Shown here piece by piece: positions 23,213-62,210 of a stretch of 64,000 nucleotides of DNA; the stretch's first letter is position 1, and each line of letters opens with the position of its first letter. The notes beneath the pieces are model-generated. The model did no database searches. It saw only the letters and a list, made by a program, of their open reading frames with translations, and was not told the DNA's origin. Source of the DNA: Setoptus koraiensis. Its lineage: Eukaryota; Animalia; Arthropoda. The stretch is taken from the NCBI GenBank assembly GCA_048013815.1, contig CM106586.1, positions 11,594,001-11,658,000 on the forward strand. Reading direction: 5' to 3'. The position numbers were made by a program, and so were the translations under genes.

Positions 23213-23247
23213 AAGCAGTCATAAACAACCGTATAATTGAATAACCG

Positions 23248-23564
23248 TTTCGTTCTGACTAACGAAGAGGGGCCGGGCGATCTCGCTTTTTGTTCCACCC
23301 CAAAATCACACACCCCCCGCGGCACGCATAGCACCCGTCCCGAAGGGAACACGAACACGAACAGGACAGCTGATTTTAAAGAGGGGAAAATTGAATGGAG
23401 ATTTTTGCTGTGCGGGGGGGAAAGCACACATTTTCTCCACTGAAGCACACAGATGCACGACAACACGATTAAGGGGAAAACTCTATGGACTTTTTTGCTG
23501 CAAAGGGGGGAGAGAAAAAAATTTTCGCTTGTTAGGACCGGCTCGCTTCGCTCGCCCGGCCCAA
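23248..23564 (-). mobile_element. Non-autonomous Helentron-type (HINE/DINE-1-like) element, copy 1
   Basis: Subterminal inverted repeats GGGCCGGGCGA (23270-23280) and TCGCCCGGCCC (23552-23562). Terminal hairpin TTCGTT-ctgact-AACGAA (23249-23266). T-run at the other end. Similar along most of its length to 42968-43315. Confidence 0.7.
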
Positions 23565-38274: not shown

Positions 38275-38930
38275 ACCTACCACTAATTCTTATCCCAAGT
38301 TACGATTTCGGGAACCGCCTGAGAAAGATTTTCTCGGCAAAGAAAAGAAGAAAAAAATAAAATGAGAGAAGTGAAACAAACCACAATTAAAGATAGTTTG
38401 CATCAATTTTGAACTTGAATTCACAAATTACTAGATTTTGCTCCTCTTTAGTTGGTTGATATATAACTTTTATATGAACTTCGGAGCGGCCATTGTGCGC
38501 ATCCGATCGTTTGCATATGCCCTTTATTCACATTGCCAGTAGTCACTATGGTCTATCAGGCTCATTCAATTGAATTTATTTAGACGATGCTTTTGTACCT
38601 AGATCGTAAACTGGGCACGAGAGGCTCGTGATAAATTGTTGACTTGATTGGCGAGCACGAGACTATCGAATCACTATATTGTTTGCATGTACATGATTCC
38701 CAAGATAGGTTAGTATGCATGAAACGATTGAACAATGATTTGCATCATTTCTCTTTGTATCTAAGTTTGATCTGCATCTAAATTGAACTAGTTAGTCAGC
38801 TCTAGTCGCGAACACGAATGAAAGTAACGGTTCTCTTCACATAATTTTATAATTATTTAAAACAATTAGCCAGAGAAGAGGCTTAGTTTTACAGTTGATT
38901 TGCTAGTAATCTTAGTTGATAAGTGCAGAG

Positions 38931-40031
38931 ATGGTTCATAGTGCACCAGGTTCGCATAGACGAGCGGTATCGGGCGAAAAAGAAAGACGCCAATTGCAAA
39001 ATTTTACAAGCGAATACCACCGCTTGAAAAGCAAGGCTTTCAATATCAACCTTGTTCTTGATGAATCGGCGATAACAAGGGACCGTTGGCGTATCGACAG
39101 GAACCAACCTATTGGTCAAGGTGCATGGTGGCAAATGTACAAGGCAACTTGTCTGGATGATTCTAGAGACTACGCAATGAAAATAATAAAGATCGATGAT
39201 CTGCCTAAAGTGTATGGTCATTGCGTTGATAAGGAACATTTACATATGTATGCAAGTTTCTCGCACCCAGTGTTGGCTGTGCCAACGGCCATTTATAAGA
39301 CAGATACCAAATTTATTTACATTGTCTTAGAATTGACTGGCCACAAGACATTTATGTCGAAATATCTGGAGACTACTTCAGTTGAGATACCAGACATAAA
39401 AAAAATAGGTAGATCATTTGGTCTGGCATTGAAATATCTACATGATATGGGTATAGCGCACACAAATTGTACCTGCAACAACATCATGATGGATCATCAA
39501 TTTCACGTAAAGGTAAGCTAATTTACGTTTATACTTAATATGAATGTCGACACATAAATGCGGAATCATCCAATCGTCAGACTAATTGATAAACGACCTT
39601 ACAATTAAAATGTTTTTTTTTACCAACGCCGAATCTTATCTGACTAGCTGTTTGGATTGGAATATTTTCATCAATGCTATGACTTGGCTGGAAACAAGCA
39701 TCTCTCTTGCTTGCCTTACGGAAAGTCACCTTATCTGCCACCTGAGGTGCTTGAGAGTCCTATGAAGCTATACGATCCATGTTGTGTAGATATCTGGTTC
39801 TATGGCTGTAGTTTGTCATACATGGCCACCAGAAAATTTCCGTTTGGTGAAGCACCTACTCGACGAGAGATTGGAGAGAGAATTGCAAATTCTTCATGGA
39901 TCGCACCGGAGGATCCGGAATTAAAACAATTACTCGACAGAATATTCGTCATGGATCCAAACAACAGAATAACTGTCGGTGACATACTTTCGAGCCAATT
40001 CTTCTCAGGTATGAGACCATCTGCTCCTTAG
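38931..40031 (+). CDS. TSSK-like Ser/Thr pseudokinase, 2 exons (38931-39512, 39648-40031)
   Basis: GQGAWW, YAMKII, LKYLHDMGIAHTN, SPYLPPEV, YDP..VDIW and RITVGDIL subdomains. AAG|GTAAGC donor and GACTAG acceptor join the two ORFs in phase 0. Confidence 0.85.
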
Positions 40032-40642
40032 AAAAAAAAACATATAGATTCGTTAGTTATTCACTAGTTGTCGCCATAATATTCAGACAGCAAAAGCATT
40101 AGAAGGAACGAAACATATATATATATTATCGAATGTCAACTAAACGAAATTTCGCACCATTATATATTTATCGATTCAGAAGAATAAACAGCATCTAAAA
40201 GCATAACTGTGTATCCGTGAATTTTAACATTTCTCTGGACGATCATTCACTCTGTTTCTTCAGAAAAACCGGTTGAGGGCACTTGAAAGGCAATTTCTAT
40301 CGATTCAGATTTTTATCCCCATGTATCAATGATCCGAACGAAATCTCAAGAGGGGAGTCATTCAATGAAAAATTTCATGTTACATAAACAAGATGAACTT
40401 CTCAATCAGTTGTAGGATATGCTTTGTTGTAGGCCGATACAGCATCGTGAATGCATTTCCTTCCGGAACCTCTTTGTAACACTATTTCGATTGACTTTAA
40501 TGAGTGCAGCGAATTGGGTTACATGAAATTTTCCGAACTCGATCTTCCTGAATACATGGTTTCAGTGGCCAAGTCACCGGAAAGAAAGCCTTCGGTAGCT
40601 TGTCGAAAAGCCATTTCGACGAAGCCTTTTCAAGCTGTTCCT

Positions 40643-41244
40643 TTAGTCCTTTGGAGCGAGACGAGCCCTCTTCCCGATATCGATCTTTATGGGGCCGTTA
40701 CCGAATAACGGCCAACATACACAAATATCGTTGTAACATATTTTCCAAAGACATAGCCGGGGCACCAGGTCGGAATCGATGGACTCGGGTTCTGAGTTAG
40801 ATCCTGCCGAACTGTCGCCATCTGAATGAGATTGAGAAGAATCACCAGCGCACGAAGAGTCTTCCTGGTGGACATCATCAGAATAAGATTCTAAATGGTT
40901 CTGCGGGTTGTCATATGATGCTGGCTTTGGTCCAGGACCGTCCCTAAGCAGACGGCACTCGACCGATACAACTGATAGTGGTTATCACGGGGTACATTGT
41001 CAGAGGAGGAGTTTGCAATTTTGTACAATTGTTATTACTCAAGAAACAGTAACTTTGCAACGATAAATAGACTTGTCAAACTAACCGAAAAATATGCAAC
41101 TGCGCCGTAATAACATGGACTATGCCAAAACTTGACACAATTTATTATGTGATTGAGCTAGATAACTATCGGGTGACTATACTTACAAGTGACACATGCA
41201 AAAACCACCATCAATAACATTTTCAATCTATTGTGAGTGTCCAT
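40643..41244 (-). CDS. Secreted prepropeptide A (128 aa), 2 exons (41244-41187, 40971-40643), 4-Cys mature region; absent from the ORF track
   Basis: MDTHNRLKMLLMVVFACVT|FVSVEC-RLLRDG...acidic Ser/Asp-rich pro-region...DSDLVPR-LCLWKICYNDICVCWPLFGNGPIKIDI-GKR-ARLAPKD*. Phase-1 GTAAGT...CTATCAG intron of 215 bp. Confidence 0.75.
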
Positions 41245-42512
41245 AGGTACTAACATAGATTGCGATATTTTTTTTATTCCACAATATAATTTAGATTGTC
41301 AGCGATTTTGAAAGAACCACTAATCATGAAATGCTTTGATTAGACTGTTGAAGGTGCCGACAATTCTATCAGTAGCACGAATAGCTATCATCAGAGGCTA
41401 GAGATAATTTCATGAATGATTCAACTCAATCGTGCTATCTATCTGTCTGAGATTGAAACATCAACGCCCAATGGCTCATGCTTGATCATAGTAAAGCAGT
41501 TGGTGCTGAGAAAAAAAATTTCAGCATATCAACTTACTCTTTTCATTATAAGAGGTAGTTTTTATTGAAAAATTTCCAGTTTGGATGGACGACAACAGGG
41601 AGCATTTTAGTGGTGTTTTCATGTGGTTCATAGTTACAGAAATTGTATCGGAAAATTTCTTACGATTTTTCACTGCACATGTGACCAATCTAGTGATGGG
41701 GGGGAGCTCCCTGTTGTCGTCCATCCAAACTGGAAATTTTTCAATAAAAACTACCTCTTATAATGAAAAGAGTAAGTTGATATGCTGAAATTTTTTTTCT
41801 CAGCACCAACTGCTTTACTATGATCAAGCATGAGCCATTGGGCGTTGATGTTTCAATCTCAGACAGATAGATAGCACGATTGAGTTGAATCATTCATGAA
41901 ATTATCTCTAGCCTCTGATGATAGCTATTCGTGCTACTGATAGAATTGTCGGCACCTTCAACAGTCTAATCAAAGCATTTCATGATTAGTGGTTCTTTCA
42001 AAATCGCTGACAATCTAAATTATATTGTGGAATAAAAAAAATATCGCAATCTATGTTAGTACCTATGGACACTCACAATAGATTGAAAATGTTATTGATG
42101 GTGGTTTTTGCATGTGTCACTTGTAAGTATAGTCACCCGATAGTTATCTAGCTCAATCACATAATAAATTGTGTCAAGTTTTGGCATAGTCCATGTTATT
42201 ACGGCGCAGTTGCATATTTTTCGGTTAGTTTGACAAGTCTATTTATCGTTGCAAAGTTACTGTTTCTTGAGTAATAACAATTGTACAAAATTGCAAACTC
42301 CTCCTCTGACAATGTACCCCGTGATAACCACTATCAGTTGTATCGGTCGAGTGCCGTCTGCTTAGGGACGGTCCTGGACCAAAGCCAGCATCATATGACA
42401 ACCCGCAGAACCATTTAGAATCTTATTCTGATGATGTCCACCAGGAAGACTCTTCGTGCGCTGGTGATTCTTCTCAATCTCATTCAGATGGCGACAGTTC
42501 GGCAGGATCTAA
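40797..42512. repeat. Large inverted repeat: 807-bp arms (40797-41603 and 41706-42512) with a 102-bp spacer; older diverged inverted homology at about 40333-40557 versus 42618-42845
   Basis: Arm coordinates are mirror-symmetric (both end pairs sum to 83309) and every segment I compared was the exact reverse complement. The outer segments align with scattered mismatches. Confidence 0.95.
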
Positions 42513-42657
42513 ATCATTACGTATAGCCTTTAATTCCGAATGGGGATCCCGCAAATGTAAGGCTAAAGTATGTTATTTGTTTTTTTGTTTTTGCTATGGC
42601 GACGACGAGGGAGTAGCCATGTATTCTAGCAGATCGAGTTCCGAAAATTTCATGTAA
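42065..42657 (+). CDS. Secreted prepropeptide B (125 aa), 2 exons (42065-42122, 42338-42657), 4-Cys mature region; absent from the ORF track
   Basis: Identical to A through ...DSSAGS, then KSLRIAFNSEWGSR-KCKAKVCYLFFCFCY-GDDEGVAMYSSRSSSENFM*. Same C-x4-CY-x3-C-x-C-aromatic spacing as A. Confidence 0.72.
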
Positions 42658-42967
42658 CCCAATTCGCTGCACACATTAAAGTCAATCGAAAAAGTATTAC
42701 AAAGAGGTTCCGAAAGGAAATGCATTCACGATGCTGTATTGGTCCATGTACGAAGCATATCTTGTAACTGATTGAGAAGTTCATCTTGTTTATGTTACAT
42801 GAAATTTTTCATTGAATGACTCCCCTCTTGAGATTTCGTTCGGATGATGACTGCAAAAGAGACAGTAGGCTAGATGAGCGAGTAGTTGCAATTGAAATAT
42901 ATGATGACCGTTACCGGAAAATTTTTTACGATTTTTCATTTCACATATGACGAATGAGCTCTTTTCA

Positions 42968-43315
42968 TTGGGCCAGGCGAGCGGAGCGAGCCGGTCCTAT
43001 CAGTTGAAAATTTTCTTCTTTCCCCCTTTTGCAGCAAGAAAGTCCATAGAGTTTTCCCCTTCATCGTGTTATCGTAAATCTGTGTGCTTCAGTGGAGAAA
43101 TCGTTTGCTTTTCCTTCGTACAGTCAAAAATCCCATTCAATTTTCCCCTCCAGAAAATCAGCTGTGGTGTTCCTGTTGGTGTTAGTGTTGGTGTTCCCTT
43201 CGGGACGGTTTCTATGAGTGCCGCGGTGGGAGTGGTTGATTTTGGTGCGGGACAAAACACCCCAAAGGAACAAAAAGCGAGCTCGCCCGGCCCCTCTTCG
43301 TTAGTCAGAACGAAA
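42968..43315 (+). mobile_element. Non-autonomous Helentron-type (HINE/DINE-1-like) element, copy 2
   Basis: TT-GGGCCAGGCGA at 42968-42980, TCGCCCGGCCC at 43283-43293, then hairpin TTCGTT-agtcag-AACGAA (43297-43314). Homologous to copy 1 in the opposite orientation. Confidence 0.7.
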
Positions 43316-43542
43316 CTGTTGTTGTTTTTTATTTTTATTTTATCCCGGCATATTTTAGAGGCATGGGGCTGTCTCATGTGAAACCTGGGGAGACAGTTGT
43401 CTCACGGGCCATATCTTCATGCAATAAATAAATATTTTCCGTCGTATTTCTTTTCAAGCGAGTTCTTTTGAATTCCTGCCTCAGTTACGGAATTATCGAT
43501 ACCCAAAAAACATTAATTAGCTAAATTATTACTTATTCATAG

Positions 43543-45684: not shown

Positions 45685-46689
45685 ATGAGACCCCGAACAT
45701 CAAGCCACCATTTCAAGGTTACTAAAGAAGATGCTAAATTAATTGTCCGAAAACTCATACGAGCTTCTCCTATTTTAGTGAACATGGTATTAATTTGCTT
45801 TACAATAAAATATCTCAGGGTTTGGTTAACCAAGATATTGGTTGATATTTTGACATTTATTCTCGGCACGTTGTGGCTTTTGAGCGATCTGATTTCTTGT
45901 ATTTGTACATTGGTTTACTTCAATGATATAGTAACAACAAACTATAGGAAACTAAAGCAAGAAATTTGTTCATGTCAAATCATAATTACAACTGTCGAAA
46001 GTCTTGTTCTGTGTGGTGTTCTATTAGACTTAATTAAATCCAACCAAAATCAATTTATAACCAGTAACGGTCATCATATATTTCAATTGCAACTACTCGC
46101 TCATCTAGCCTACTGTCTCTTTTGCAATCATCGTGAACACTCGACAGTTTTTCAACGAACTTTAGGAATATTACAGGTTTCTGAAACTCACAAGCCATCG
46201 GAAACTGCTGGAGCTACTAAAACTGCCGGAGCTTCCCCAAAAACTGTCAGAACTCGCAAAGCCGCTAAAATACCGAAATCTGCCAATACTCTGAAGACTC
46301 GTAAAACAGCACAGGCCCGTTCTAAAACTGCTAAAGCACGTTCTAAAACCGGCAAAGCTCGTCCCAAAACTGTCAAAGCTCGTCCCAAAACTATCAAAGC
46401 TCGTCCTAAAACCGTCAAATCTCGTCCCAAAACCGTCAAATCTCGTGGTAAAACTGTCGAATCTCTTGACCAAACTGTTCCCTCCGCGTCTATTTCCAGA
46501 GACTTGCCCAAAGTAATGACGAAAAGACGCACAAAGTCTCGAACTACTGAGACTAGCGATTTAGAAATGGAAGGAATAATAGACGATTCACAAGAGATGG
46601 TAAGAAGAAAAAATCGAAGGACTAGCAGTAGAAGCTCACCGGTCAACAGGACGATCAATTTGAATTTTGAGCTCAATGAAGCCATCTAG
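45685..46689 (+). CDS. Hypothetical protein: hydrophobic N-terminal half plus basic heptad repeats R[SPG]KT[AVIG][KE][AS]
   Basis: 334-aa ORF with seven 21-bp tandem units at 46318-46464 and an Arg/Ser-rich C-terminus. Confidence 0.65.
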   Translation: MRPRTSSHHFKVTKEDAKLIVRKLIRASPILVNMVLICFTIKYLRVWLTKILVDILTFILGTLWLLSDLISCICTLVYFNDIVTTNYRKLKQEICSCQIIITTVESLVLCGVLLDLIKSNQNQFITSNGHHIFQLQLLAHLAYCLFCNHREHSTVFQRTLGILQVSETHKPSETAGATKTAGASPKTVRTRKAAKIPKSANTLKTRKTAQARSKTAKARSKTGKARPKTVKARPKTIKARPKTVKSRPKTVKSRGKTVESLDQTVPSASISRDLPKVMTKRRTKSRTTETSDLEMEGIIDDSQEMVRRKNRRTSSRSSPVNRTINLNFELNEAI

Positions 46690-49719: not shown

Positions 49720-50112
49720 GCAGACGCCGGAGGGTGGTAGGTGTGGGTATGGGGTGTTCTAGTGTATGCAGAATTAATGGGTATTATGTGGGTTTTTTGT
49801 TAGACTGGGGGGTGGTCGGGCCGTAGTGACGCTGTCTGGCCGGGGTGGGGGATGGGAGGCTTCCTTGGGTGGGTTGCATCTTTTAGTGTTTAGGGTTTTT
49901 TTGGTTAACACCAACCCCACAACAACCCACCCAAACACCACAACCCCCACCCCCCCCCCCACCCACCCCCCCCCCCACACCCCCCAACCCCCCCCACCCC
50001 CCCCACCCCCCCCCCCCACCACACACAACCCCCCACCACCCCCAACCCCCCAACACCCCAACCACCCCCCCCCCCCACACCCCCACCCCCCCCCCCCCCC
50101 CACCACACACCC

Positions 50113-50147
<35 letters not shown>

Positions 50148-51733
50148 ACACCCACCACCGACTCACCACACACACACACCCCCACCTCTCTCCCCTCACT
50201 CGTCAAACACAATCTAACACTACACGTCATCCTCACGACCCTCAGACAGCACGACCTCACTCCCCACACACACACCCCACACGCCACTCACACCACAAAC
50301 TCCAAAACCACCACACTACAAAACAGACCATCACGCCACTGCACACACCTCCCTACTCCACACCACACGCCCACCCATACCACTCCTATCACACTCCTCA
50401 CCTCCCCAAGATCACACTAACACACACCCAACCACCTGCACCACTCCCTGCAATAACCATCCCCAACTCCCCAGCCACCCCACTACCGCTCCACACACAC
50501 ATCCCCGCACCCCACCCTCACACTTACGCCCCGCCCAACCCTCGCACTCTCCTACGAACAACAAACCACACCCCGGACCACCCACGCATACACCTCCACC
50601 ACTACCGCCCCCACCCCCAGCACTCCCCACCCACACCAGCACTCCACACACACACACCCCACACTACCCCACTCTCAACCCCACCACATCTTCTCGCCAC
50701 ATCACACACCCCACCACCGCCGCCTCACTCCCAGCCCGCGACACTCACACGCTCGATCACGCGCACCTCACACCACACCCCACCAACCGCCACCCCACGC
50801 ACCCCACTCACCTCGCACAATCATCACTCAGCACACCACGCTATCGCGCACCACCCCGCACGCACACTCACCACGCGCCCTCCCACCACCCCCCACACCG
50901 CCTCATCCGCACTCACGCCTGCACGCATCATCCCTCCCACACTACCCACCCCACCCCCACATACTCACTCCCACCCCACTACCTGCCACTCCTCACCTCA
51001 CTGCACCCCACATACACCATTCGCACGCTCGCTCACTTTACACGCAAACAACACACCCAACCAACTACATAACCTCACACTGCAAACACACCCCACACCA
51101 CACAACCGCACCACCTACCCCGCACCTCCCACCTGCCCTTGTCTCCGCTCCGCCACTCTTTGCCACCTCCTCTCCCACCACAAACCACACACAACCAAAC
51201 TGACCACCGCACACACCAAACACAGCACGTAAGTGCACCACACACAACCACACATCTCAACACACCCCCACACCCACACAACCACACCCACTCAACACAC
51301 ACCCACTACCAACACACACCCAACCACACCCACCACACACCCAACCCACACACTCACACCCCACCCACACCCCCTTCCACCCCCGCACTCACACCCCACA
51401 AACACACACACTCCCTCACCCCCCCACCCCCACCCCCACCACCCACTCACACACAACCCCCACCCACCACCACAACACCTCACACACACACACACACCAC
51501 CACCCACACCCACCCACCCACACACACACTCACCCACCCCTCCCACAACACACACCCCACCCTCACCCTCCTCCACTCGCACACTCACACCCCCACCAAC
51601 ACTCCTCCCCACACACACACACACCACACATCCCCTCACACTCCAACACCACTCACACACCCCGCCCACCCCACACACACCCTCGCTACACACCCCACAC
51701 ACACCTCCACACACACACGACCCACACCCACAC
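49720..51733. other. Low-complexity C/A-rich (locally G/T-rich) sequence, probably an unpolished contig end
   Basis: Abrupt composition switch, long irregular C homopolymers and aperiodic CA runs with very little G, ending at the N gap. Confidence 0.8.
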
Positions 51734-52233
51734 NNNNNNNNNNNNNNNNNNNNNNNNNNNNNNNNNNNNNNNNNNNNNNNNNNNNNNNNNNNNNNNNNNN
51801 NNNNNNNNNNNNNNNNNNNNNNNNNNNNNNNNNNNNNNNNNNNNNNNNNNNNNNNNNNNNNNNNNNNNNNNNNNNNNNNNNNNNNNNNNNNNNNNNNNNN
51901 NNNNNNNNNNNNNNNNNNNNNNNNNNNNNNNNNNNNNNNNNNNNNNNNNNNNNNNNNNNNNNNNNNNNNNNNNNNNNNNNNNNNNNNNNNNNNNNNNNNN
52001 NNNNNNNNNNNNNNNNNNNNNNNNNNNNNNNNNNNNNNNNNNNNNNNNNNNNNNNNNNNNNNNNNNNNNNNNNNNNNNNNNNNNNNNNNNNNNNNNNNNN
52101 NNNNNNNNNNNNNNNNNNNNNNNNNNNNNNNNNNNNNNNNNNNNNNNNNNNNNNNNNNNNNNNNNNNNNNNNNNNNNNNNNNNNNNNNNNNNNNNNNNNN
52201 NNNNNNNNNNNNNNNNNNNNNNNNNNNNNNNNN
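51734..52233. other. Scaffold gap of exactly 500 N
   Basis: Directly visible. The round length suggests a fixed-size scaffolding gap. Confidence 0.99.
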
Positions 52234-54773: not shown

Positions 54774-56840
54774 ATGTTTGCCAATCATTGTACGATTCTC
54801 AACAAAAATCAAAACAAAATTACCCAGTCAATTGCTATTATCCTGAAATTGTTACAATTATTCATATGCTCACTATTGATTTTATACCCAGTCGTTGAAA
54901 CTAGCTTGAGTTCTTCTTTATTTGACCGGTCCCAATCTAACAAAAACCACCCTAACTATGAACCGATTGACAGGGGTAAGAGATATATGCTCTATGGAGC
55001 GATTGAGGAAAAACCCTGCCATTTGAAGAGTTTCAAAGATGTAGTGTGTACAGCACGTACACATGATGATAGATATGAGTACAGTTGCCCAAACAACAAT
55101 GAACAAGCAACAAATGTAAGCGATGTTTGCCTGCCGGATGTCAAGAACAAAGGCTTAAAGTTTACTTTTCGATTTGATATAGATGATCGGACTACATTCA
55201 GTTGGAAATATTTGGATTTCAAGCCCATTCAGAATGGAAATACTGGCGACAGTTTTGCCTCAACCAATCAGCTAGTTGAAGTCGTCATCGAAGGAAGCAG
55301 AGATTTTCTCATGAACAAAGGCAAAATTAAGTTTCTCGATGATACTGAAGATGATATTCTATTGGACAACCTGAAATCTTTCACTCTAAAAAACATTCTT
55401 CTAACAGATATGAAGTCATGGGAAATGTTCTCTCAAATACCATACCTCAGCAGATTCGCATTCATTTATGGTAAGCCTCTCTCTAGCATAGACATTATTG
55501 ACGCTTTAGAGATGAACAATAATATTCCAAGAAATTACAACCCTCTATCGCCACACCAGTTGTCTAGTAGAAAATCCTTCAAACTACACGTGGGGGCACC
55601 TAGTTTAATAATTCCCGAAAACATCAAATTTCTCTTCCTTATCGGTGATCGCTCAAATTGTGAACTGACATTCAATTATTGGCACAACGAATTGACTAAC
55701 AAGAGTTTTCAAGGCTATGATAGCACAAGTCAAATAAAAGAAGATACTGTCGGAGATGCTGAAATACGAATGAGCGATAACTCTATAGATATTGTTGGAG
55801 AACCAGGTATTAATTCTTCGATAAATTTGCGATTCACGAATATCAAACTTGAATCAAAATTGACAAATATTTTGAAGAGTCTTTATAATGAAAGTCTTAA
55901 TGATTACAAAATCCGATTAAATATGGTAATGGATGTCGAAGAATACGCCATCAACAAATTGGAAGATCTGATATCTTTGGTTGAATCCGGTGTTAATTTA
56001 GTGCACTATAAACGATTCACTGAAACTGAACAGGACATAAATAACCAATTAGACTGTACAAACTACTATTTATGTCCAGCAATTAAAGGGAATAGCAGAT
56101 TCCGCAGTCGTATTGAAGCACATTGTATTTTATGTAATGACACAATTGGTGAAATGAAAATTCTTGTTTCCCCATCGAAGGAAAGTTATTATTATAATTG
56201 CAAAGAGATTATTATATCAAAGATGGGACACGAGGAAATATTTGCTTTGCGATGTCAGACAGAACCACCAACCGAAGAGAAAAATTCGGCAACTGCCATT
56301 ATGGCTATTATAATTAGCTCTAGTATTATTATCATAGTGCTCTTGTTGATGATTATTGTTTATCTAGCAACAACTCACATCAATTACCATGTCAAAATGG
56401 CTAGCGGAAGTGATTCTTTAGCTACACAAGTTACAAAGAACTCGTTACCTTTATTTGAGTCGCACGAAACTATGAAGAGTGAACAAAAAACAACTCTAAA
56501 GCCACGGAGTAGAGTAAAGACTGAGCAAGCAACAAATCTAGAGCCACGGAGTAGTGTAAAAAATGAACAAAAAACAAATCTAAAGCCACGGAGTAGTGTA
56601 AAGACTGGGCACGCAACAAATCTAGAGCCACGGAGTAGTGTAAAAAATGAACAAAAAACAAATCTAAAGCCACGGAGTAGTGTAAAAAGTGAACAAAAAA
56701 CAAATCTAAAGCCACGGAGTAGTGTAAAAAGTGTGCAAAAATTACCAATAGATGATATTAATAATCATAAAACTAGTCGTTCCATTGTTAAGTCTACCAA
56801 GAAGTCGACCAGCAAGTCAACAAGTTCGAGGAAAGAATGA
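54774..56840 (+). CDS. Single-pass membrane protein (688 aa), degenerate LRR-like/Cys-containing ectodomain, cytoplasmic 14-aa tandem repeats
   Basis: N-terminal hydrophobic segment, TM IMAIIISSSIIIIVLLLMIIVYL, and six 42-bp units (SVKNEQKTNLKPRS-type) at about 56472-56740. Confidence 0.75.
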   Translation: MFANHCTILNKNQNKITQSIAIILKLLQLFICSLLILYPVVETSLSSSLFDRSQSNKNHPNYEPIDRGKRYMLYGAIEEKPCHLKSFKDVVCTARTHDDRYEYSCPNNNEQATNVSDVCLPDVKNKGLKFTFRFDIDDRTTFSWKYLDFKPIQNGNTGDSFASTNQLVEVVIEGSRDFLMNKGKIKFLDDTEDDILLDNLKSFTLKNILLTDMKSWEMFSQIPYLSRFAFIYGKPLSSIDIIDALEMNNNIPRNYNPLSPHQLSSRKSFKLHVGAPSLIIPENIKFLFLIGDRSNCELTFNYWHNELTNKSFQGYDSTSQIKEDTVGDAEIRMSDNSIDIVGEPGINSSINLRFTNIKLESKLTNILKSLYNESLNDYKIRLNMVMDVEEYAINKLEDLISLVESGVNLVHYKRFTETEQDINNQLDCTNYYLCPAIKGNSRFRSRIEAHCILCNDTIGEMKILVSPSKESYYYNCKEIIISKMGHEEIFALRCQTEPPTEEKNSATAIMAIIISSSIIIIVLLLMIIVYLATTHINYHVKMASGSDSLATQVTKNSLPLFESHETMKSEQKTTLKPRSRVKTEQATNLEPRSSVKNEQKTNLKPRSSVKTGHATNLEPRSSVKNEQKTNLKPRSSVKSEQKTNLKPRSSVKSVQKLPIDDINNHKTSRSIVKSTKKSTSKSTSSRKE

Positions 56841-57539: not shown

Positions 57540-58946
57540 TTACAAATTTTTTGTTGTTATTGGCACTGTTAGATCGGGATAGACTTCACGAACATAAAAT
57601 GAGAACGGTTTGCATCCGAGTTGCTTGCGTAATTCCTTTCTTTTGCTAATATCACCATAGTCACCTAGATTATTATCAATGTTTTTGTAATAGTATGCTT
57701 TGTACTCATCCATCCAAACTTCTGCCAGTCTAACGTTATTCCTCTTGATTAAATTGACGCCAGGTTTCCATCGATAGGGCGACCTAGATCTAAACATATG
57801 ACCAACGTGCGAGCAAGGCACTATCTCCAATTTACCGCCGCACATCCAAGTCTTAAAGCTGAGCTCTAGATTTTCACCGCCCCAAATTTCAAAGCCATCA
57901 TCGTAGCGACCCAATCTATTGAAAAAGTCTCTATGTATTGAAAATATACCACCGGCTATTGTTGGTGTTCTAACAGGGTCTGTAATAAGTACACGCGATG
58001 CTTTATCTCTGTCAGGCAATATATGCCAATTGAATTGTAGATTCCAATCAAATCCACCCACATTAATATAATCCAGACTGGACCTTGAAGAAAATTCAAA
58101 TGTCTCCGCATTAATAGAATCAATAACGGGACTAACCACTGTCCATGAATCTTGATAAATACGATTAATCAGTGGCTCTAACCAGCCCTGCGTGCATTCG
58201 ATGTGCGAATCAAGAAAAGTTAGCACCTCACCAGAGGCCACATCGGCGCCGGCAAGCCTTGCTCTGATGAGGCCTTCTCGCTGTTGTTTTCTCACAATTT
58301 TGATTAATTTATCCTTGTTGTTATCCGTGCTATCCTTTTTCCCAAATAATCGTCGGTATTTGGTCGGTTTGCCAAACGATTTGTGCTTGCCAGGGGGGAG
58401 ATTTGAGTTGAGCTTTGTTAAATAGTCTTCAAGTGGCTTCTTCAAGTGATCCAAGTCTGAGCAATCGTCGACGAGAATGATCTCGAGCAAAAGTTCCCTC
58501 GGGGTGCGATTCAGCACTGAGTGAACTGAGCGCAACAGTGTTGACCATGCCTCATTGTGGAAGCACATAATAATACTAGTTTTGGGTAGTTTTCTTGTAG
58601 GGTTGTAATCTATATTTTTGCAACGCGGATCGCGTATATCCGCCAGTTGACGCTCTAATGGTATCATATCACTAGCAAACTGATTGAATGCGTTCCTTTT
58701 CCAGCCATGATCGTATTCACTCTTTTGTGTTTCGGTTAATTTTGTCTTATCTATTCTGACAGCTTGGCCCATATATCCTGGATATGCATTCGTTGATTTA
58801 TCTCTAAACTTGTGTACTTTATAAGCCATAACTAGGACAATGGTAACAACAGACGCTACTAGGAATAAGTATACTCTAAATTTTGTGATTTTTCGCTTGA
58901 GAACACTCAAGCGGGTATCAGGTGAAAAAAGGATTTGATCGGCCAT
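57540..58946 (-). CDS. Polypeptide N-acetylgalactosaminyltransferase (GT27) lacking the ricin-B lectin domain
   Basis: Type II TM, LPKTSIIMCFHNEAWSTLLRSVHSV, FLDSHIEC (DxH), PTIAGGIF, WGGENLELSF, VPCSHVGH and RLAEVWMD. The ORF ends right after ...VYPDL. Confidence 0.92.
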   Translation of the reverse strand: MADQILFSPDTRLSVLKRKITKFRVYLFLVASVVTIVLVMAYKVHKFRDKSTNAYPGYMGQAVRIDKTKLTETQKSEYDHGWKRNAFNQFASDMIPLERQLADIRDPRCKNIDYNPTRKLPKTSIIMCFHNEAWSTLLRSVHSVLNRTPRELLLEIILVDDCSDLDHLKKPLEDYLTKLNSNLPPGKHKSFGKPTKYRRLFGKKDSTDNNKDKLIKIVRKQQREGLIRARLAGADVASGEVLTFLDSHIECTQGWLEPLINRIYQDSWTVVSPVIDSINAETFEFSSRSSLDYINVGGFDWNLQFNWHILPDRDKASRVLITDPVRTPTIAGGIFSIHRDFFNRLGRYDDGFEIWGGENLELSFKTWMCGGKLEIVPCSHVGHMFRSRSPYRWKPGVNLIKRNNVRLAEVWMDEYKAYYYKNIDNNLGDYGDISKRKELRKQLGCKPFSFYVREVYPDLTVPITTKNL

Positions 58947-59999: not shown

Positions 60000-62210
60000 T
60001 TCCATATGAATATCCATATAGTATCCACTTAGCGATACATATAATACGTACATGTGTACACGTGTATATAAGGGCGAACTCAATGTAAAGAAAGTTGTAT
60101 ACTAAAATCATCGTTCAGATATTCACAAACAAATAAAGTAGATATGTATTCACTGTTAAGTCGAAATTCCCTTCTTAAGTCGACTTAACACGACAATTTT
60201 AGTATACCAATTATCACCAGTTAATTAGTTAATTACGTCAAACTTTAATCAATTAGAAGAGCGTCAAATTCACCTCGATCAAGATGATTTCAGATGAAGC
60301 GCTCAAGAAAATGACCAAAGAGGAGCTTGTTGCCCTCATACAATCAAAGACAAAGAAGTTCAAGAAGCTTGACATCCCAACTTACAAAGGCTATGATGAA
60401 GTTATTACAGCTTCTGATTGGTTAGACATGTACAGCAATTTCGCTGATGAAGATGCATGGCCAGAGGAGAGAAAAATCAACCAGCTATGCGGTTATCTCA
60501 GAGAAGTCGCTCTTCAATGGTATTTCTGCCATGTTAGTGGCTATGAACTAACTTGGGATGAAGTTCATGATCTCTTTACCAATACGTTCGGTGTCGGTGA
60601 TCATCCGAACATAAATAAGATCTTAGATAGCTGTTGGAATCCGGATAAAGAGTCATTAGTTAAATACTATCAAGGCTCATTGAATGCCGAAAAGCTGGTA
60701 TCAAAGGCGAGTTAGTTAACCAACTCTTGACACGTGGGCTACCTGACTACATGAAGAAATGGGTAAATTCGTTAAGACGATCCGCCGAACCGGAAGAGTG
60801 GTTTGAAATGGTCAGTCAAGCTAAATTGAATTACCCCGAGAGAAAAGTCAAGTATCCATCGAAAGAATTCATCAATAGTCTTGAAATAGATGAAGCGAAA
60901 CAACAGTTTCGAGAAGTTTCATCTAACAACCACCTATAGATGCTGACAAGAACAAAACAGAGTCAACATCTTGTAACTATTGTGGTAAAAATAATCACTC
61001 TGAGGACCGTTGTTTTGAGAAACACGGGTACCCATCAAGAAAGAAGAAACAAGAAAATAATTCACAAGTGAACACTATTAACTGCACACATAAACCGGAA
61101 GTTGATACGTCCAGACAGCGGTTAATTCAACATGATGAACTTCAAGTCAATCAAGTGAACGAAGATTGTCAACTTGACTTCGCAGATTCAGCGATAGATG
61201 AAGCTTTCTGCAATATCAACAATAAGATTCCCTACTACCAAGAAAAGAAATCAGTTAAAGGCCCAACAAGTGTATTTGAAACAAAGGGATATGCCCATCT
61301 ACAAGTTCAGATCGCTAATAAGTTATGTAATATCAGAGTAGCAGTGGCAGAGTTAATTAGCCAGAATTTTATACTGGGTCGAAACTACATCAAAGTATTT
61401 GGATATGATTTAATTGGCCATAGTCTAATTAAGGGACCGCCTAAACTATCAAGACAAGTTTTACCGGCCATAGGATCTATCTCAAGTAGTTTTGATGAGT
61501 TGATGCAACTTCCTGTTATTAATTCAATTAATCAGCGAAATCCATCGGACAAAAGGAATCACATCAATACCAAGACCATCGATTTGAACAAGAAGTATCA
61601 AAATATATTTGGTCAATCAGATTTCGATGTAGGTTCATGTGACCTAATTGAATGTTATATACATTTAAAACCGGAAACAACGCTTTTGTGTGCAAAACCG
61701 AGGAGACTTTCTCTTGCCATCCAGATAGAAGAAAAGAAACAGGTTGAAGAACCTCTCAAGGCTAAATTAATAAGACCATCTTTTTCGAACTGGTCAAGCG
61801 GTATCACATTCCCTTGCGGTCCAGGGAAACGTCCAAGATTGTGCGGTGATTACCGTTATGAACACACTCTTGATGACAAGTATCCGATTCCACTAATTGA
61901 TAACATTTTATTATCACTTCAAGGTGCTAGTGTTTATTCAACTTTGGATGTTGTGCGTGGATACAGCCACATCTCCATTCATGAGGACCACAAATTCAAA
62001 ACTGCGTTTATAACCAACATCGGTCTCTTCGAATGGAGTGTGCTTCCCTTTGGGTTAAAAAATGCACCTGCAATATTCTAAAGATTGATGGATTTTATAT
62101 TGAAAGAACTATCAGACTTCGCTAGAGTTTATTTCGATGATATTTTAGTGTTTTCAAAAGACGCAGCAAGTCATGTATCCCATCTTAACACAACAATAGA
62201 CTGTACCACT
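60000..62210 (+). mobile_element. Decayed Ty3/Gypsy LTR retrotransposon: probable 5' LTR, gag, CCHC knuckle, degenerate protease region, 5' part of RT
   Basis: gag-like ORFs 60284-60715 and 60727-60939. CNYCGKNNHSEDRC at 60972-61013. RT motifs RLCGDYR, YPIPLID, STLDVVRGY, KTAF, LPFGLKNAPAIF*, VYFDDILVFS, broken by stops and frameshifts. TATA, AATAAA and a ...TTAACA end at 60190 suggest an LTR. No RNase H or integrase. Confidence 0.9.

What the first reader, a model, noticed from the sequence alone, without database searches (positions are those of the whole stretch)
40643..42657. Head-to-head twin genes for secreted prepropeptides with hypervariable 4-Cys beta-hairpin-like mature regions
Seen: neither gene is in the ORF track. 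Both have a signal peptide interrupted by a phase-1 intron and an identical acidic Ser/Asp pro-region. They then diverge completely except for an Arg before the motif and the Cys frame: R-LCLWKICYNDICVCW versus R-KCKAKVCYLFFCFCY (C-x4-CY-x3-C-x-C-aromatic). Copy A has a GKR amidation/cleavage signal. Established: tachyplesin (WCFRVCYRGICY), gomesin and protegrin are 4-Cys beta-hairpin peptides made as precursors with anionic pro-segments, and many arachnid toxin genes have an intron in the signal-peptide region. Inference: an undescribed family of antimicrobial, toxin or seminal hairpin peptides with a conserved precursor and a fast-evolving payload.
Basis: partly seen in the sequence, partly recalled or inferred. 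Interest (0 to 1): 0.85.

Follow-up and report, generated by a model that had tools for sequence, protein, structure and literature searches.

The report
Palindromic pair of secreted-peptide genes
Two mirror-image copies of what looks like a small secreted, four-cysteine peptide gene sit in a 2.5-kb inverted duplication whose inner 807 bases are identical; the pattern is real in the DNA, but the genes have no known relatives or transcript evidence, and they do not fit the tachyplesin/protegrin hairpin peptides.

Summary
Both strands carry the same two-exon model: a hydrophobic leader exon, a 215-nt GTAAGT...CAG phase-1 intron and an open second exon. They share an Arg plus C-x4-C-Y-x3-C-x-C-aromatic motif, expected 0.07 times per shuffled window.

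The "twins" are the arms of one inverted repeat.
- Positions 40797-41603 and 41706-42512 are 100% identical, including 5' flank and intron. The identical pro-region therefore says nothing about selection.
- Identity then falls to 52% over 87 nt, in gapless register and equally at all three codon positions.
- Copy A then has 133 extra nt.
- Non-coding outer arms resume at about 92%.

The payload is therefore an old or swapped cassette, not recent amino-acid-driven change.

No relative turned up in Pfam, PDB sequences, 5.8 billion proteins, 1.84 billion representatives or two metagenome scans.

Best reading (0.5): a divergently transcribed pair of lineage-specific secreted disulfide peptides, with arm-to-arm gene conversion stopped by the diverged cassette. 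The closest analogues are frog antimicrobial and cone-snail peptide precursors.

Tachyplesin-type membership fails on Cys spacing, charge and precursor order. Copy A's GKR site may be intronic.

Expression and the palindrome itself remain unverified. Interest is moderate.

The parts
40329..40559 (.). Left outer arm of the inverted duplication. It is the 3' flank or UTR of copy A and looks non-coding.
   Evidence: It is 91-94% complementary to 42617-42848 and 210/229 identical in alignment. No frame shows a synonymous excess, and stops occur in nearly all frames. ATTAAA lies on the - strand starting at 40501.
40560..40709 (-). Segment specific to copy A (150 nt against 17 nt in B, a net 133 nt). 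It holds the end of the unspliced A reading frame, including GKR and the stop at 40643-40645.
   Evidence: It has no other copy in the window.
40710..40796 (-). Copy A diverged cassette: 29 codons holding the Arg and the four-Cys motif (Cys region 40712-40753).
   Evidence: It aligns without gaps to 42514-42600 at 45/87 nt identity, against 22.6 +/- 4.0 in shuffles.
40797..41603 (.). Left inner arm, a perfect copy of the right inner arm. It carries the 5' flank, exon 1, the intron and the first 58 codons of exon 2 of copy A.
   Evidence: There are 0 mismatches in 807 nt.
40643..40971 (-). Copy A exon 2 in the unspliced model, stop codon included.
   Evidence: The frame is open. The codon-usage score is best in this frame.
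40972..41186 (-). Copy A intron 1 (215 nt, phase 1), the mirror of the intron in B.
41187..41256 (-). Copy A exon 1, a hydrophobic leader. The earliest in-frame ATG is at 41256; later ones mirror those of B.
40548..40701 (-). Candidate second intron, in copy A only (154 nt, GTAACG...TTCAG, phase 1). It would bring the B-like tail RSSSENFM and its stop into frame and would make the GKR site intronic.
   Evidence: B's tail matches A at 40522-40587 in another frame. The donor is weak: it has C at +5, whereas the three other introns read in the window have G there.
41604..41705 (.). Non-palindromic spacer between the arms. Positions 41646-41689 are 86% identical to 42912-42955, in direct orientation.
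41706..42512 (.). Right inner arm, a perfect copy. It includes a TATA-like TATATT at 42021-42026.
42053..42122 (+). Copy B exon 1, a hydrophobic leader. In-frame ATGs lie at 42053, 42065, 42089 and 42098.
   Evidence: The last 12 residues have a mean hydropathy (GRAVY) of 2.21.
42123..42337 (+). Copy B intron 1 (215 nt, GTAAGTAT...TATCAG, phase 1, 36% GC). A CTGAC branch-like site lies about 27 nt before the AG.
42338..42657 (+). Copy B exon 2, stop codon included.
   Evidence: The frame is open. The codon-usage score is best in this frame.
42513..42599 (+). Copy B diverged cassette, holding the Arg and the four-Cys motif (Cys region 42556-42597).
42617..42848 (.). Right outer arm. It holds the last 13 codons of B and its 3' flank or UTR, with ATTAAA at 42675-42680.

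Best explanation
The locus is a real inverted duplication of about 2.5 kb (40329-42848). It holds two divergently transcribed paralogous genes.

Each gene would encode a small secreted precursor with four parts:
- a signal peptide split by a phase-1 intron;
- an acidic, Ser/Asp-rich, disordered propeptide (net charge -7);
- a conserved Arg;
- a hydrophobic 16-residue four-Cys region that probably forms a disulfide-braced strand-turn-strand.

Shown: the anatomy of the repeat, the open frames, the splice signals, the Cys frame, and the three-step divergence profile of 0%, 48% and 8%.

Inferred:
1. The inner arms are kept identical by arm-to-arm gene conversion, or by a very recent copy-over.
2. 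Conversion tracts cannot pass the strongly diverged cassette, so the outer arms drift on their own.
3. The cassette is either much older than the flanks or was exchanged with an unseen paralogue. Locally raised mutation is the third possibility.
4. The products are extracellular effector peptides (defence, host or mate interaction), released from the acidic propeptide by cleavage near the conserved Arg.

In design this resembles frog antimicrobial and cone-snail peptide precursors. It is not a member of any described family.
For: - Inverted repeat: 807 of 807 identical inner arms, a 102-nt spacer and outer arms at about 92%. The flanks on the two sides are different and unique.
- Gene model: a consensus GTAAGT donor and a CAG acceptor, with an intron length (215 nt) like the window's other introns.
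- The exon-2 frame cannot be expressed without the splice.
- The proposed frame is the best of six by codon usage in all four pieces, scoring +6.2, +2.0, +4.8 and +2.4.
- Both diverged tails stay open for about 50 codons. Only 5.8% of 50-codon windows in presumed intergenic DNA do so.
- The Cys frame lies in gapless register with the repeat and is expected 0.07 times per window.
- A TATA-like box lies about 30-70 nt upstream of the ATGs, and ATTAAA is conserved in both outer arms.
- The propeptide carries net charge -7. The cores have GRAVY of about +0.9 and four Cys each.
- AlphaFold2 places strands at 73-79 and 82-87 in both copies, with pLDDT of 72-79 in A and about 60 in B.
- The outer arms behave as non-coding DNA.
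- Frog AMP genes show the same mosaic of conserved signal, conserved propiece and 3' UTR around a mature domain, with nucleotide diversity of 0.35-0.44 (PMC7106915).
Against: - There are no transcripts, no peptide data and no relative anywhere. The "family" is two copies at one locus.
- The identity of the prepro part is uninformative, because non-coding DNA around it is identical too.
- The acceptor has a poor pyrimidine tract.
- The Arg is not a canonical dibasic site in A.
- The C-terminal tails are not homologous in the unspliced models. B's tail is homologous to sequence that lies after A's stop, in another frame. At least one copy therefore has a derived or accidental end.
- Part of the Cys-codon match sits in T/G-rich sequence.
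- The structure models are single-sequence and weak.
- In a two-residue-turn hairpin only the two middle Cys face each other (my reading).
Confidence: 0.5

Rival explanations
1. The inverted duplication is real, but the reading frames are not functional genes. They would be chance or decaying ORFs (for example a dying orphan gene and its copy), and the shared Cys-codon pattern would be residual nucleotide homology.
For: - No homologue was found at any depth.
- About six ORFs of 108 or more codons are expected by chance in 64 kb at this composition (my estimate from the base composition).
- The tails after the Cys motif differ in length and frame.
- Divergence is equal at all codon positions, as in unconstrained DNA.
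- Most long ORFs in this window are also orphans, so being an orphan decides nothing either way.
Against: - Four independent signals coincide: leader exon, consensus donor, frame-preserving acceptor and best-of-six codon score.
- Both diverged tails remain open, which has a probability of about 0.058 each in intergenic DNA.
- All four Cys plus Arg, Lys and Tyr are kept in register where the remaining positions are 45% identical.
Confidence: 0.25
2. This is the same gene pair, but copy A has a second intron (40701 to 40548, - strand). Both proteins would then end in the shared tail RSSSENFM. The A-specific GKR, and the peptide end the reader predicted, would be intronic. Copy B would have lost most of that intron by a 133-nt deletion and would now translate the remnant.
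For: - The GT...AG pair is in phase 1 and restores exactly the tail that B reads.
- B residues 84-105 match A at 40522-40587 at 64% identity.
- Homology between the copies resumes 12 nt before the candidate acceptor.
- In the nine tail codons, stop included, the only difference is synonymous.
Against: - The donor GTAACG has C at +5, whereas the three introns read in this window have G there.
- One GT-AG pair in three restores a frame by chance.
- A single synonymous change is not evidence of constraint.
Confidence: 0.25
3. The perfect inner arms are an assembly or polishing artefact. Two similar copies or haplotypes would have been homogenised, or an inverted chimera would have been built into the contig.
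For: - A run of 0 mismatches in 807 nt next to 8% divergence is abrupt.
- The window comes from a scaffolded draft with a 500-N gap and about 2 kb of odd C/A-rich sequence beside it.
- The right flank is a patchwork of short duplicated pieces.
Against: - The two copies differ in the cassette, in a 133-nt indel and in the outer arms. Each abuts its own unique flank, which a fold-back read artefact or collapsed haplotypes would not give.
- The locus is about 9 kb from the gap.
- A block to gene conversion at a diverged cassette explains the abrupt boundary naturally.
Confidence: 0.08
4. The palindrome acts as RNA or as a mobile element. Either read-through transcription gives an 807-bp perfect hairpin that feeds small-RNA production, or the unit is a foldback-type transposon.
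For: - The arms and loop would fold perfectly. The central 191 nt alone folds at -94.8 kcal/mol, z = -12.6.
- The upstream kinase-like gene is on the + strand and points into the repeat.
Against: - There is no other copy of any part of the arms in the window.
- There is no convincing target-site duplication at 40329 and 42848 (my reading).
- No transposase or Rfam match was found.
- No parent gene for a hairpin to target was seen.
- The coding-like features would be left unexplained.
Confidence: 0.05

Closest known systems
Amphibian skin antimicrobial-peptide precursors (temporin, brevinin and dermaseptin type)
   Same: - The order is signal peptide, acidic propiece, then a hypervariable C-terminal peptide.
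- Conserved 5' parts and a conserved 3' UTR flank a mature domain with very high nucleotide diversity: 0.35-0.44 against 0.115 in the propiece (PMC7106915). Here the profile is 0%, 48% and 8%.
- Some members carry a Gly plus basic amidation signal (own knowledge).
   Different: - There is no sequence similarity.
- Frog peptides are mostly linear, cationic helices released at Lys-Arg. Here there are four Cys, hydrophobic cores and a single Arg.
- Only two copies are seen, arranged as a palindrome.
Conopeptide and teretoxin gene superfamilies of conoidean snails
   Same: A conserved signal and pro region is followed by a hypervariable mature region that keeps a fixed cysteine framework (PMC4494067 and PMC8066144, from the hit list; the papers themselves were not read).
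   Different: - There is no sequence similarity.
- In cone snails the three parts lie on separate exons (own knowledge). Here the pro and Cys parts share one exon, and the break in identity falls in mid-exon.
- Large families are known there, two copies here.
- Nothing ties this organism to venom.
Tachyplesin, polyphemusin, gomesin and androctonin beta-hairpin antimicrobial peptides
   Same: - They are short peptides with four Cys and a predicted strand-turn-strand.
- The middle loop C-Y-x3-C has the same spacing as in polyphemusin III (abstract of PMC6315362).
- Amidation is usual (PMC13001179), and copy A has a GKR.
   Different: - The outer spacing is asymmetric (4 and 1, against 3 and 3).
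- Net charge is 0 or +3, not strongly cationic.
- The acidic segment is N-terminal, not a C-terminal extension (own knowledge of those precursors).
- Their precursors fall in the length range searched and did not come back.
Cathelicidin (protegrin) and BRICHOS-type (arenicin, alvinellacin, capitellacin) precursors
   Same: A long N-terminal pro-region is followed by a C-terminal disulfide hairpin peptide (PMC13001179; PMC7761999, abstract).
   Different: No cathelin or BRICHOS domain was detected in the exon-2 peptides, which include the pro-region. The pro-region is only about 65 residues and is predicted to be disordered.
Palindromic segmental duplications homogenised by arm-to-arm gene conversion (for example sex-chromosome palindromes, and young inverted duplicates in animals)
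   Same: Inverted arms lie around a short unique spacer, and arm identity is far above that of neighbouring duplicated sequence. For background, PMC13688818 and PMC3194840 appeared in the hit list; I did not read them.
   Different: The scale is very small (0.8-kb perfect arms). The perfect tract ends at a diverged coding cassette inside a gene. Conversion itself is inferred, not shown.

Membership tests
Tachyplesin/polyphemusin/gomesin-type beta-hairpin AMPs | Two cross-strand disulfides from symmetric Cys spacing (C-x3-C-x4-C-x3-C) | tested here: not met
   The spacing here is C-x4-C-x4-C-x-C in both copies. The comparator spacing comes from the polyphemusin III sequence in the abstract of PMC6315362.
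Tachyplesin/polyphemusin/gomesin-type beta-hairpin AMPs | Strongly cationic, amphipathic peptide | tested here: not met
   The 16-residue cores carry net charge 0 (A) and +3 (B), with GRAVY of about +0.9. B is followed by an acidic stretch.
Tachyplesin/polyphemusin/gomesin-type beta-hairpin AMPs | Precursor order: signal, mature peptide, Gly-Lys-Arg, acidic C-terminal extension (own knowledge) | tested here: not met
   The acidic segment precedes the Cys region. GKR occurs in A only, 13 residues after the last Cys, and may be intronic.
Tachyplesin/polyphemusin/gomesin-type beta-hairpin AMPs | Detectable sequence similarity to family members | tested here: not met
   There was no hit at E <= 1 among proteins of 59-189 residues and none in the profile search of 1.84 billion representatives. 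The PDB sequence library omits chains under 20 residues, so the mature peptides themselves could not be hit.
Cathelicidins (protegrin) | Cathelin-like pro-domain | tested here: not met
   The Pfam scan of both exon-2 peptides found no cathelicidin domain at E <= 0.1.
BRICHOS-associated hairpin AMPs (arenicin type) | BRICHOS domain in the pro-region | tested here: not met
   The Pfam scan found none.
Prepropeptide families with conserved prepro and hypervariable Cys-framework mature region (conopeptide or frog-AMP design) | Cys framework kept while the residues between the Cys are replaced | tested here: met
   All four Cys are kept, and 9 of 29 residues are identical in the cassette.
Prepropeptide families with conserved prepro and hypervariable Cys-framework mature region (conopeptide or frog-AMP design) | Prepro region conserved by selection across many paralogues or species | tested here: inconclusive
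   The prepro region is identical, but so are the intron and the 5' flank. Only two copies are seen and there are no relatives.
Prepropeptide families with conserved prepro and hypervariable Cys-framework mature region (conopeptide or frog-AMP design) | Excess of amino-acid-changing over silent change in the mature region | tested here: inconclusive
   The region is saturated, with identity of 13, 17 and 15 of 29 at codon positions 1, 2 and 3.
Palindromes maintained by arm-to-arm gene conversion | Inverted arms with a spacer, and arm identity above that of adjacent duplicated DNA | tested here: met
   The counts are 0 of 807 mismatches (95% upper bound 0.37%) against 19 of 229.
Palindromes maintained by arm-to-arm gene conversion | Conversion shown by comparison with an outgroup or a population | not testable with these tools
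   No other assembly of this or a close species could be reached.

The most novel reading that the evidence does not exclude
An unsampled, long-branch invertebrate lineage carries a new family of secreted, disulfide-braced hydrophobic hairpin peptides. Their genes would be organised as a mini-palindrome. Gene conversion would keep the promoter, signal and propeptide identical, while a strongly diverged Cys cassette blocks conversion and is thereby preserved as two distinct payloads. This would be a compact, built-in way to hold two different peptides under one regulatory design.
Probability: 0.3. Interest if true: 0.65.

Novelty: new member of a known kind. Interest (0 to 1): 0.4.

Why it matters
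If the genes are expressed, this would be an orphan peptide family from a poorly sampled animal lineage. It would also be a very clean small example of how recombination and sequence divergence partition a gene. One part (regulation, export signal, propeptide) is kept identical between copies. The other part (the payload) stays different.

That bears on how defence, venom and reproductive peptide families diversify. If the genes are not expressed, the locus is simply a young palindromic duplication.

Tried and rejected
Searches for relatives all came back empty:
- Pfam on both exon-2 peptides gave only a sub-threshold low-complexity AF-4 hit.
- PDB sequence searches gave nothing meaningful.
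- The word-indexed search of 5.8 billion proteins found nothing with A's exon 2 or with B's cassette alone.
- The HMMER profile of A plus B against 1.84 billion representatives gave one hit, P0121. It is a tandem-repeat protein that lacks the second Cys. Its pairwise E-value is 0.004 against A, and it has no alignment to B. I rejected it as chance.
- Two metagenome scans found nothing. One used the search for related loci on the alignment. The other used a 32-letter degenerate back-translation of 11 residues of the window's own exon 1.
- Foldseek of the copy A model against PDB gave no match below E = 1.

Identifying the organism failed:
- Four neighbouring ORFs are not on record.
- The GalNAc-transferase ORF is at best 66% identical to an unnamed Logan contig, and 54-59% identical to mites, tardigrades, nematodes and molluscs alike.
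- A neighbour-joining tree leaves it on a long unplaced branch.

Other steps that led nowhere:
- I tested whether the outer arms code in any frame. There is no synonymous excess, and stops are common.
- The bacterial promoter and terminator scan is not applicable to this eukaryotic DNA.
- I looked for further copies or cassettes in the window by blastn and tblastn and found none.
- Rfam gave no match.

The step I left out: I did not hand a joined exon 1 + exon 2 string to any tool. All searches, folds and scores were done exon by exon, by reference. Signal-peptide cleavage across the junction was therefore judged by eye only.
Full report
**1. What is in the sequence**

The region is one long inverted repeat. 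A base-by-base mirror comparison shows that 40797-41603 and 41706-42512 are identical at all 807 positions. They lie around a 102-nt non-palindromic spacer, 41604-41705.

Outward from the perfect arms, identity drops abruptly. The next 87 nt still align without any gap, at 45/87 identity. Shuffled sequence gives 22.6 +/- 4.0, and none of 100,000 shuffles reached 45.

Copy A then carries 150 nt where copy B has 17. Homology resumes in the outer arms, 40329-40559 and 42617-42848, at 210/229. Beyond 40329 and 42848 the flanks are unrelated to each other.

**2. The gene model**

On the + strand the in-frame ATGs lie at 42053, 42065, 42089 and 42098. They open a hydrophobic leader whose last 12 residues have a mean hydropathy (GRAVY) of 2.21. 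The leader ends at 42122, one base into a codon.

- GTAAGTAT follows the leader. The 215-nt intron ends in TATCAG at 42337, with a CTGAC branch-like site upstream.
- The exon-2 frame is closed by two stops just upstream of the acceptor and has no in-frame ATG. It can be expressed only through this splice.
- Copy A is the exact mirror: 41256-41187, intron 41186-40972, exon 2 40971-40643.
- Other introns read in the window are similar in size and signals. The kinase-like gene has GTAAGC and about 136 nt. The leucine-rich-repeat gene has GTGAGT and about 140 nt.
- I trained a codon-usage log-odds on 6,474 codons of the window's long ORFs. The proposed frame is the best of six in all four pieces: shared exon 2 +6.2, B tail +2.0, A tail +4.8, exon 1 +2.4. 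Much of the contrast with other frames comes from stop codons.
- Both diverged tails stay open for about 50 codons. Only 5.8% of such windows in presumed intergenic DNA are open.
- A TATATT lies at 42021. ATTAAA is conserved in both outer arms, at 42675 on the + strand and at 40501 on the - strand.

Everything was run exon by exon, by reference. The cleavage site of the leader, plausibly after the fifth residue of exon 2 by the -3/-1 rule, is my reading only.

**3. The product**

Exon 2 begins with 57 residues shared by both copies. These are disordered in the models, Ser/Asp-rich, and carry net charge -7 over residues 6-57. The cassette follows: 29 aligned residues of which 9 are identical, namely an Arg, a Lys, a Tyr, two Ser and all four Cys.

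- The motif C-x4-C-Y-x3-C-x-C-aromatic is found only at these two places. The looser four-Cys pattern is expected 0.07 times per shuffled window.
- The 16-residue cores are hydrophobic (GRAVY +0.95 and +0.84), with net charge 0 in A and +3 in B.
- Single-sequence AlphaFold2 models place strand 73-79, a two-residue turn and strand 82-87 in both copies. pLDDT there is 72-79 in A and about 60 in B. This is weak support for a hairpin.
- In such a hairpin only the two middle Cys face each other, so the pairing of the outer two is open (inference).

**4. The ends differ**

- In the unspliced model A ends 22 residues after the aromatic residue that closes the motif and contains GKR.
- B ends 19 residues after the motif, in a tail that runs into the outer arm.
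- B's tail is homologous to A sequence that lies after A's stop and in another frame. The extra 133 nt in A is not a multiple of three.
- A GT...AG pair at 40701 and 40548 (154 nt, phase 1) would splice A onto exactly the same tail, RSSSENFM plus stop. It would also remove the GKR.
- The donor is weak, so I give this model about 0.25.

**5. How the divergence should be read**

The identical "pro-region" is part of an 807-nt tract that also covers the intron and about 350 nt of 5' flank. It therefore carries no information about selection on the protein.

- The outer arms look non-coding. No frame has a synonymous excess, and stops occur in nearly all frames. They differ by 8.3%.
- The cassette differs by 48%, and equally at all three codon positions. 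Its Jukes-Cantor (JC) corrected distance is 0.77, against 0.088 for the outer arms, about nine-fold higher.
- Selection for amino-acid change cannot saturate silent sites. The cassette must therefore be much older than its flanks, or have been exchanged with an unseen paralogue, or mutate faster locally.
- The simplest account (inference) is an older inverted duplication whose arms recombine with each other. Conversion tracts starting in the inner arms stop where homology fails, at the cassette. The inner arms therefore stay identical (95% upper bound on divergence 0.37%) while the outer arms drift.

**6. Relatives and context**

Nothing related was found. The searches covered Pfam, PDB sequences, 5.8 billion clustered proteins (two searches), a HMMER profile against 1.84 billion representatives, two metagenome scans and Foldseek against PDB. 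No further copy lies in the window.

The source is an animal genome with long, intron-poor ORFs, most of them without any Pfam domain. Its GalNAc-transferase ORF is equidistant from mites, tardigrades, nematodes and molluscs, and sits on a long unplaced branch. The species could not be reached in the contig index. The neighbours of the locus are a kinase-like gene on the left and an Ig-domain membrane protein on the right.

**7. Comparison with known systems**

In design the locus is closest to two groups:
- Frog skin antimicrobial-peptide genes have a conserved signal, an acidic propiece, a hypervariable mature domain with nucleotide diversity of 0.35-0.44, and a conserved 3' UTR (PMC7106915).
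- Conoidean toxin genes have a conserved signal and pro region and a hypervariable mature region on a fixed Cys framework (PMC4494067 and PMC8066144, hit list; not read).

Membership in the tachyplesin/polyphemusin/gomesin group fails on Cys spacing, charge, precursor order and sequence. Cathelicidin and BRICHOS-type precursors fail on the absence of their pro-domains.

The PDB sequence library leaves out chains shorter than 20 residues, so the mature hairpin peptides themselves could not have been hit. I had tachyplesin, gomesin and protegrin in mind and typed none of them.

**8. Verdict**

- The most likely reading (0.5) is a palindromic pair of lineage-specific genes for secreted disulfide peptides, with conversion-homogenised 5' parts and an old or swapped Cys cassette.
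- The main rival (0.25) is that the frames are not functional genes.
- Artefact (0.08) and hairpin-RNA or transposon readings (0.05) are minor.
- Expression data and long reads over the locus would settle most of this.

All were taken from the window.

Noticed in passing
window 42849-43323: The DNA just right of the palindrome is a patchwork of short duplicated pieces. Positions 42849-42917 are 97% identical to 46061-46129 (inverted), which lies inside the long ORF 45685-46689. Positions 42912-42955 are 86% identical to part of the palindrome's spacer (41646-41689, direct). Positions 42968-43323 are 80% identical to 23240-23564 (inverted). This may mark templated filler from a complex rearrangement.
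   Followed up: partly
window 49774-52233: About 2 kb of C- and CA-rich low-complexity sequence includes a C-rich run of about 200 nt (about 72% C). It ends at a gap of exactly 500 N (51734-52233). This looks like a scaffold join in a draft assembly.
   Followed up: no
window 38916-40031 (+): A protein-kinase-domain gene is split by an intron of about 136 nt (GTAAGC...CTAG, roughly 39513-39648). The catalytic-loop and DFG positions read as non-canonical, which suggests a pseudokinase.
   Followed up: partly
window 60284-62081 (+): These are retroelement-like ORFs. The second one (61068-62081) has a reverse-transcriptase hit (RVT_1, E = 7e-8). I did not examine them further and did not assess their integrity.
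   Followed up: no
window 57540-58946 (-): The polypeptide GalNAc-transferase ORF stops after the catalytic domains. tblastn with three relatives that carry the usual C-terminal ricin-type lectin domain found no such exon downstream in the window.
   Followed up: partly
window 46318-46465 and 56480-56741: There are in-frame coding tandem repeats: 21 nt x 7 inside ORF 45685-46689, and 42 nt (or 84 nt) x 6 inside ORF 54774-56840. They give Lys/Arg-rich peptide repeats.
   Followed up: no
whole window: Most long ORFs (up to 899 residues, largely uninterrupted) have no Pfam domain. Many end in Ser-rich low-complexity tails. The source looks like a compact, fast-evolving animal genome that is not represented in the protein collections searched.
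   Followed up: partly
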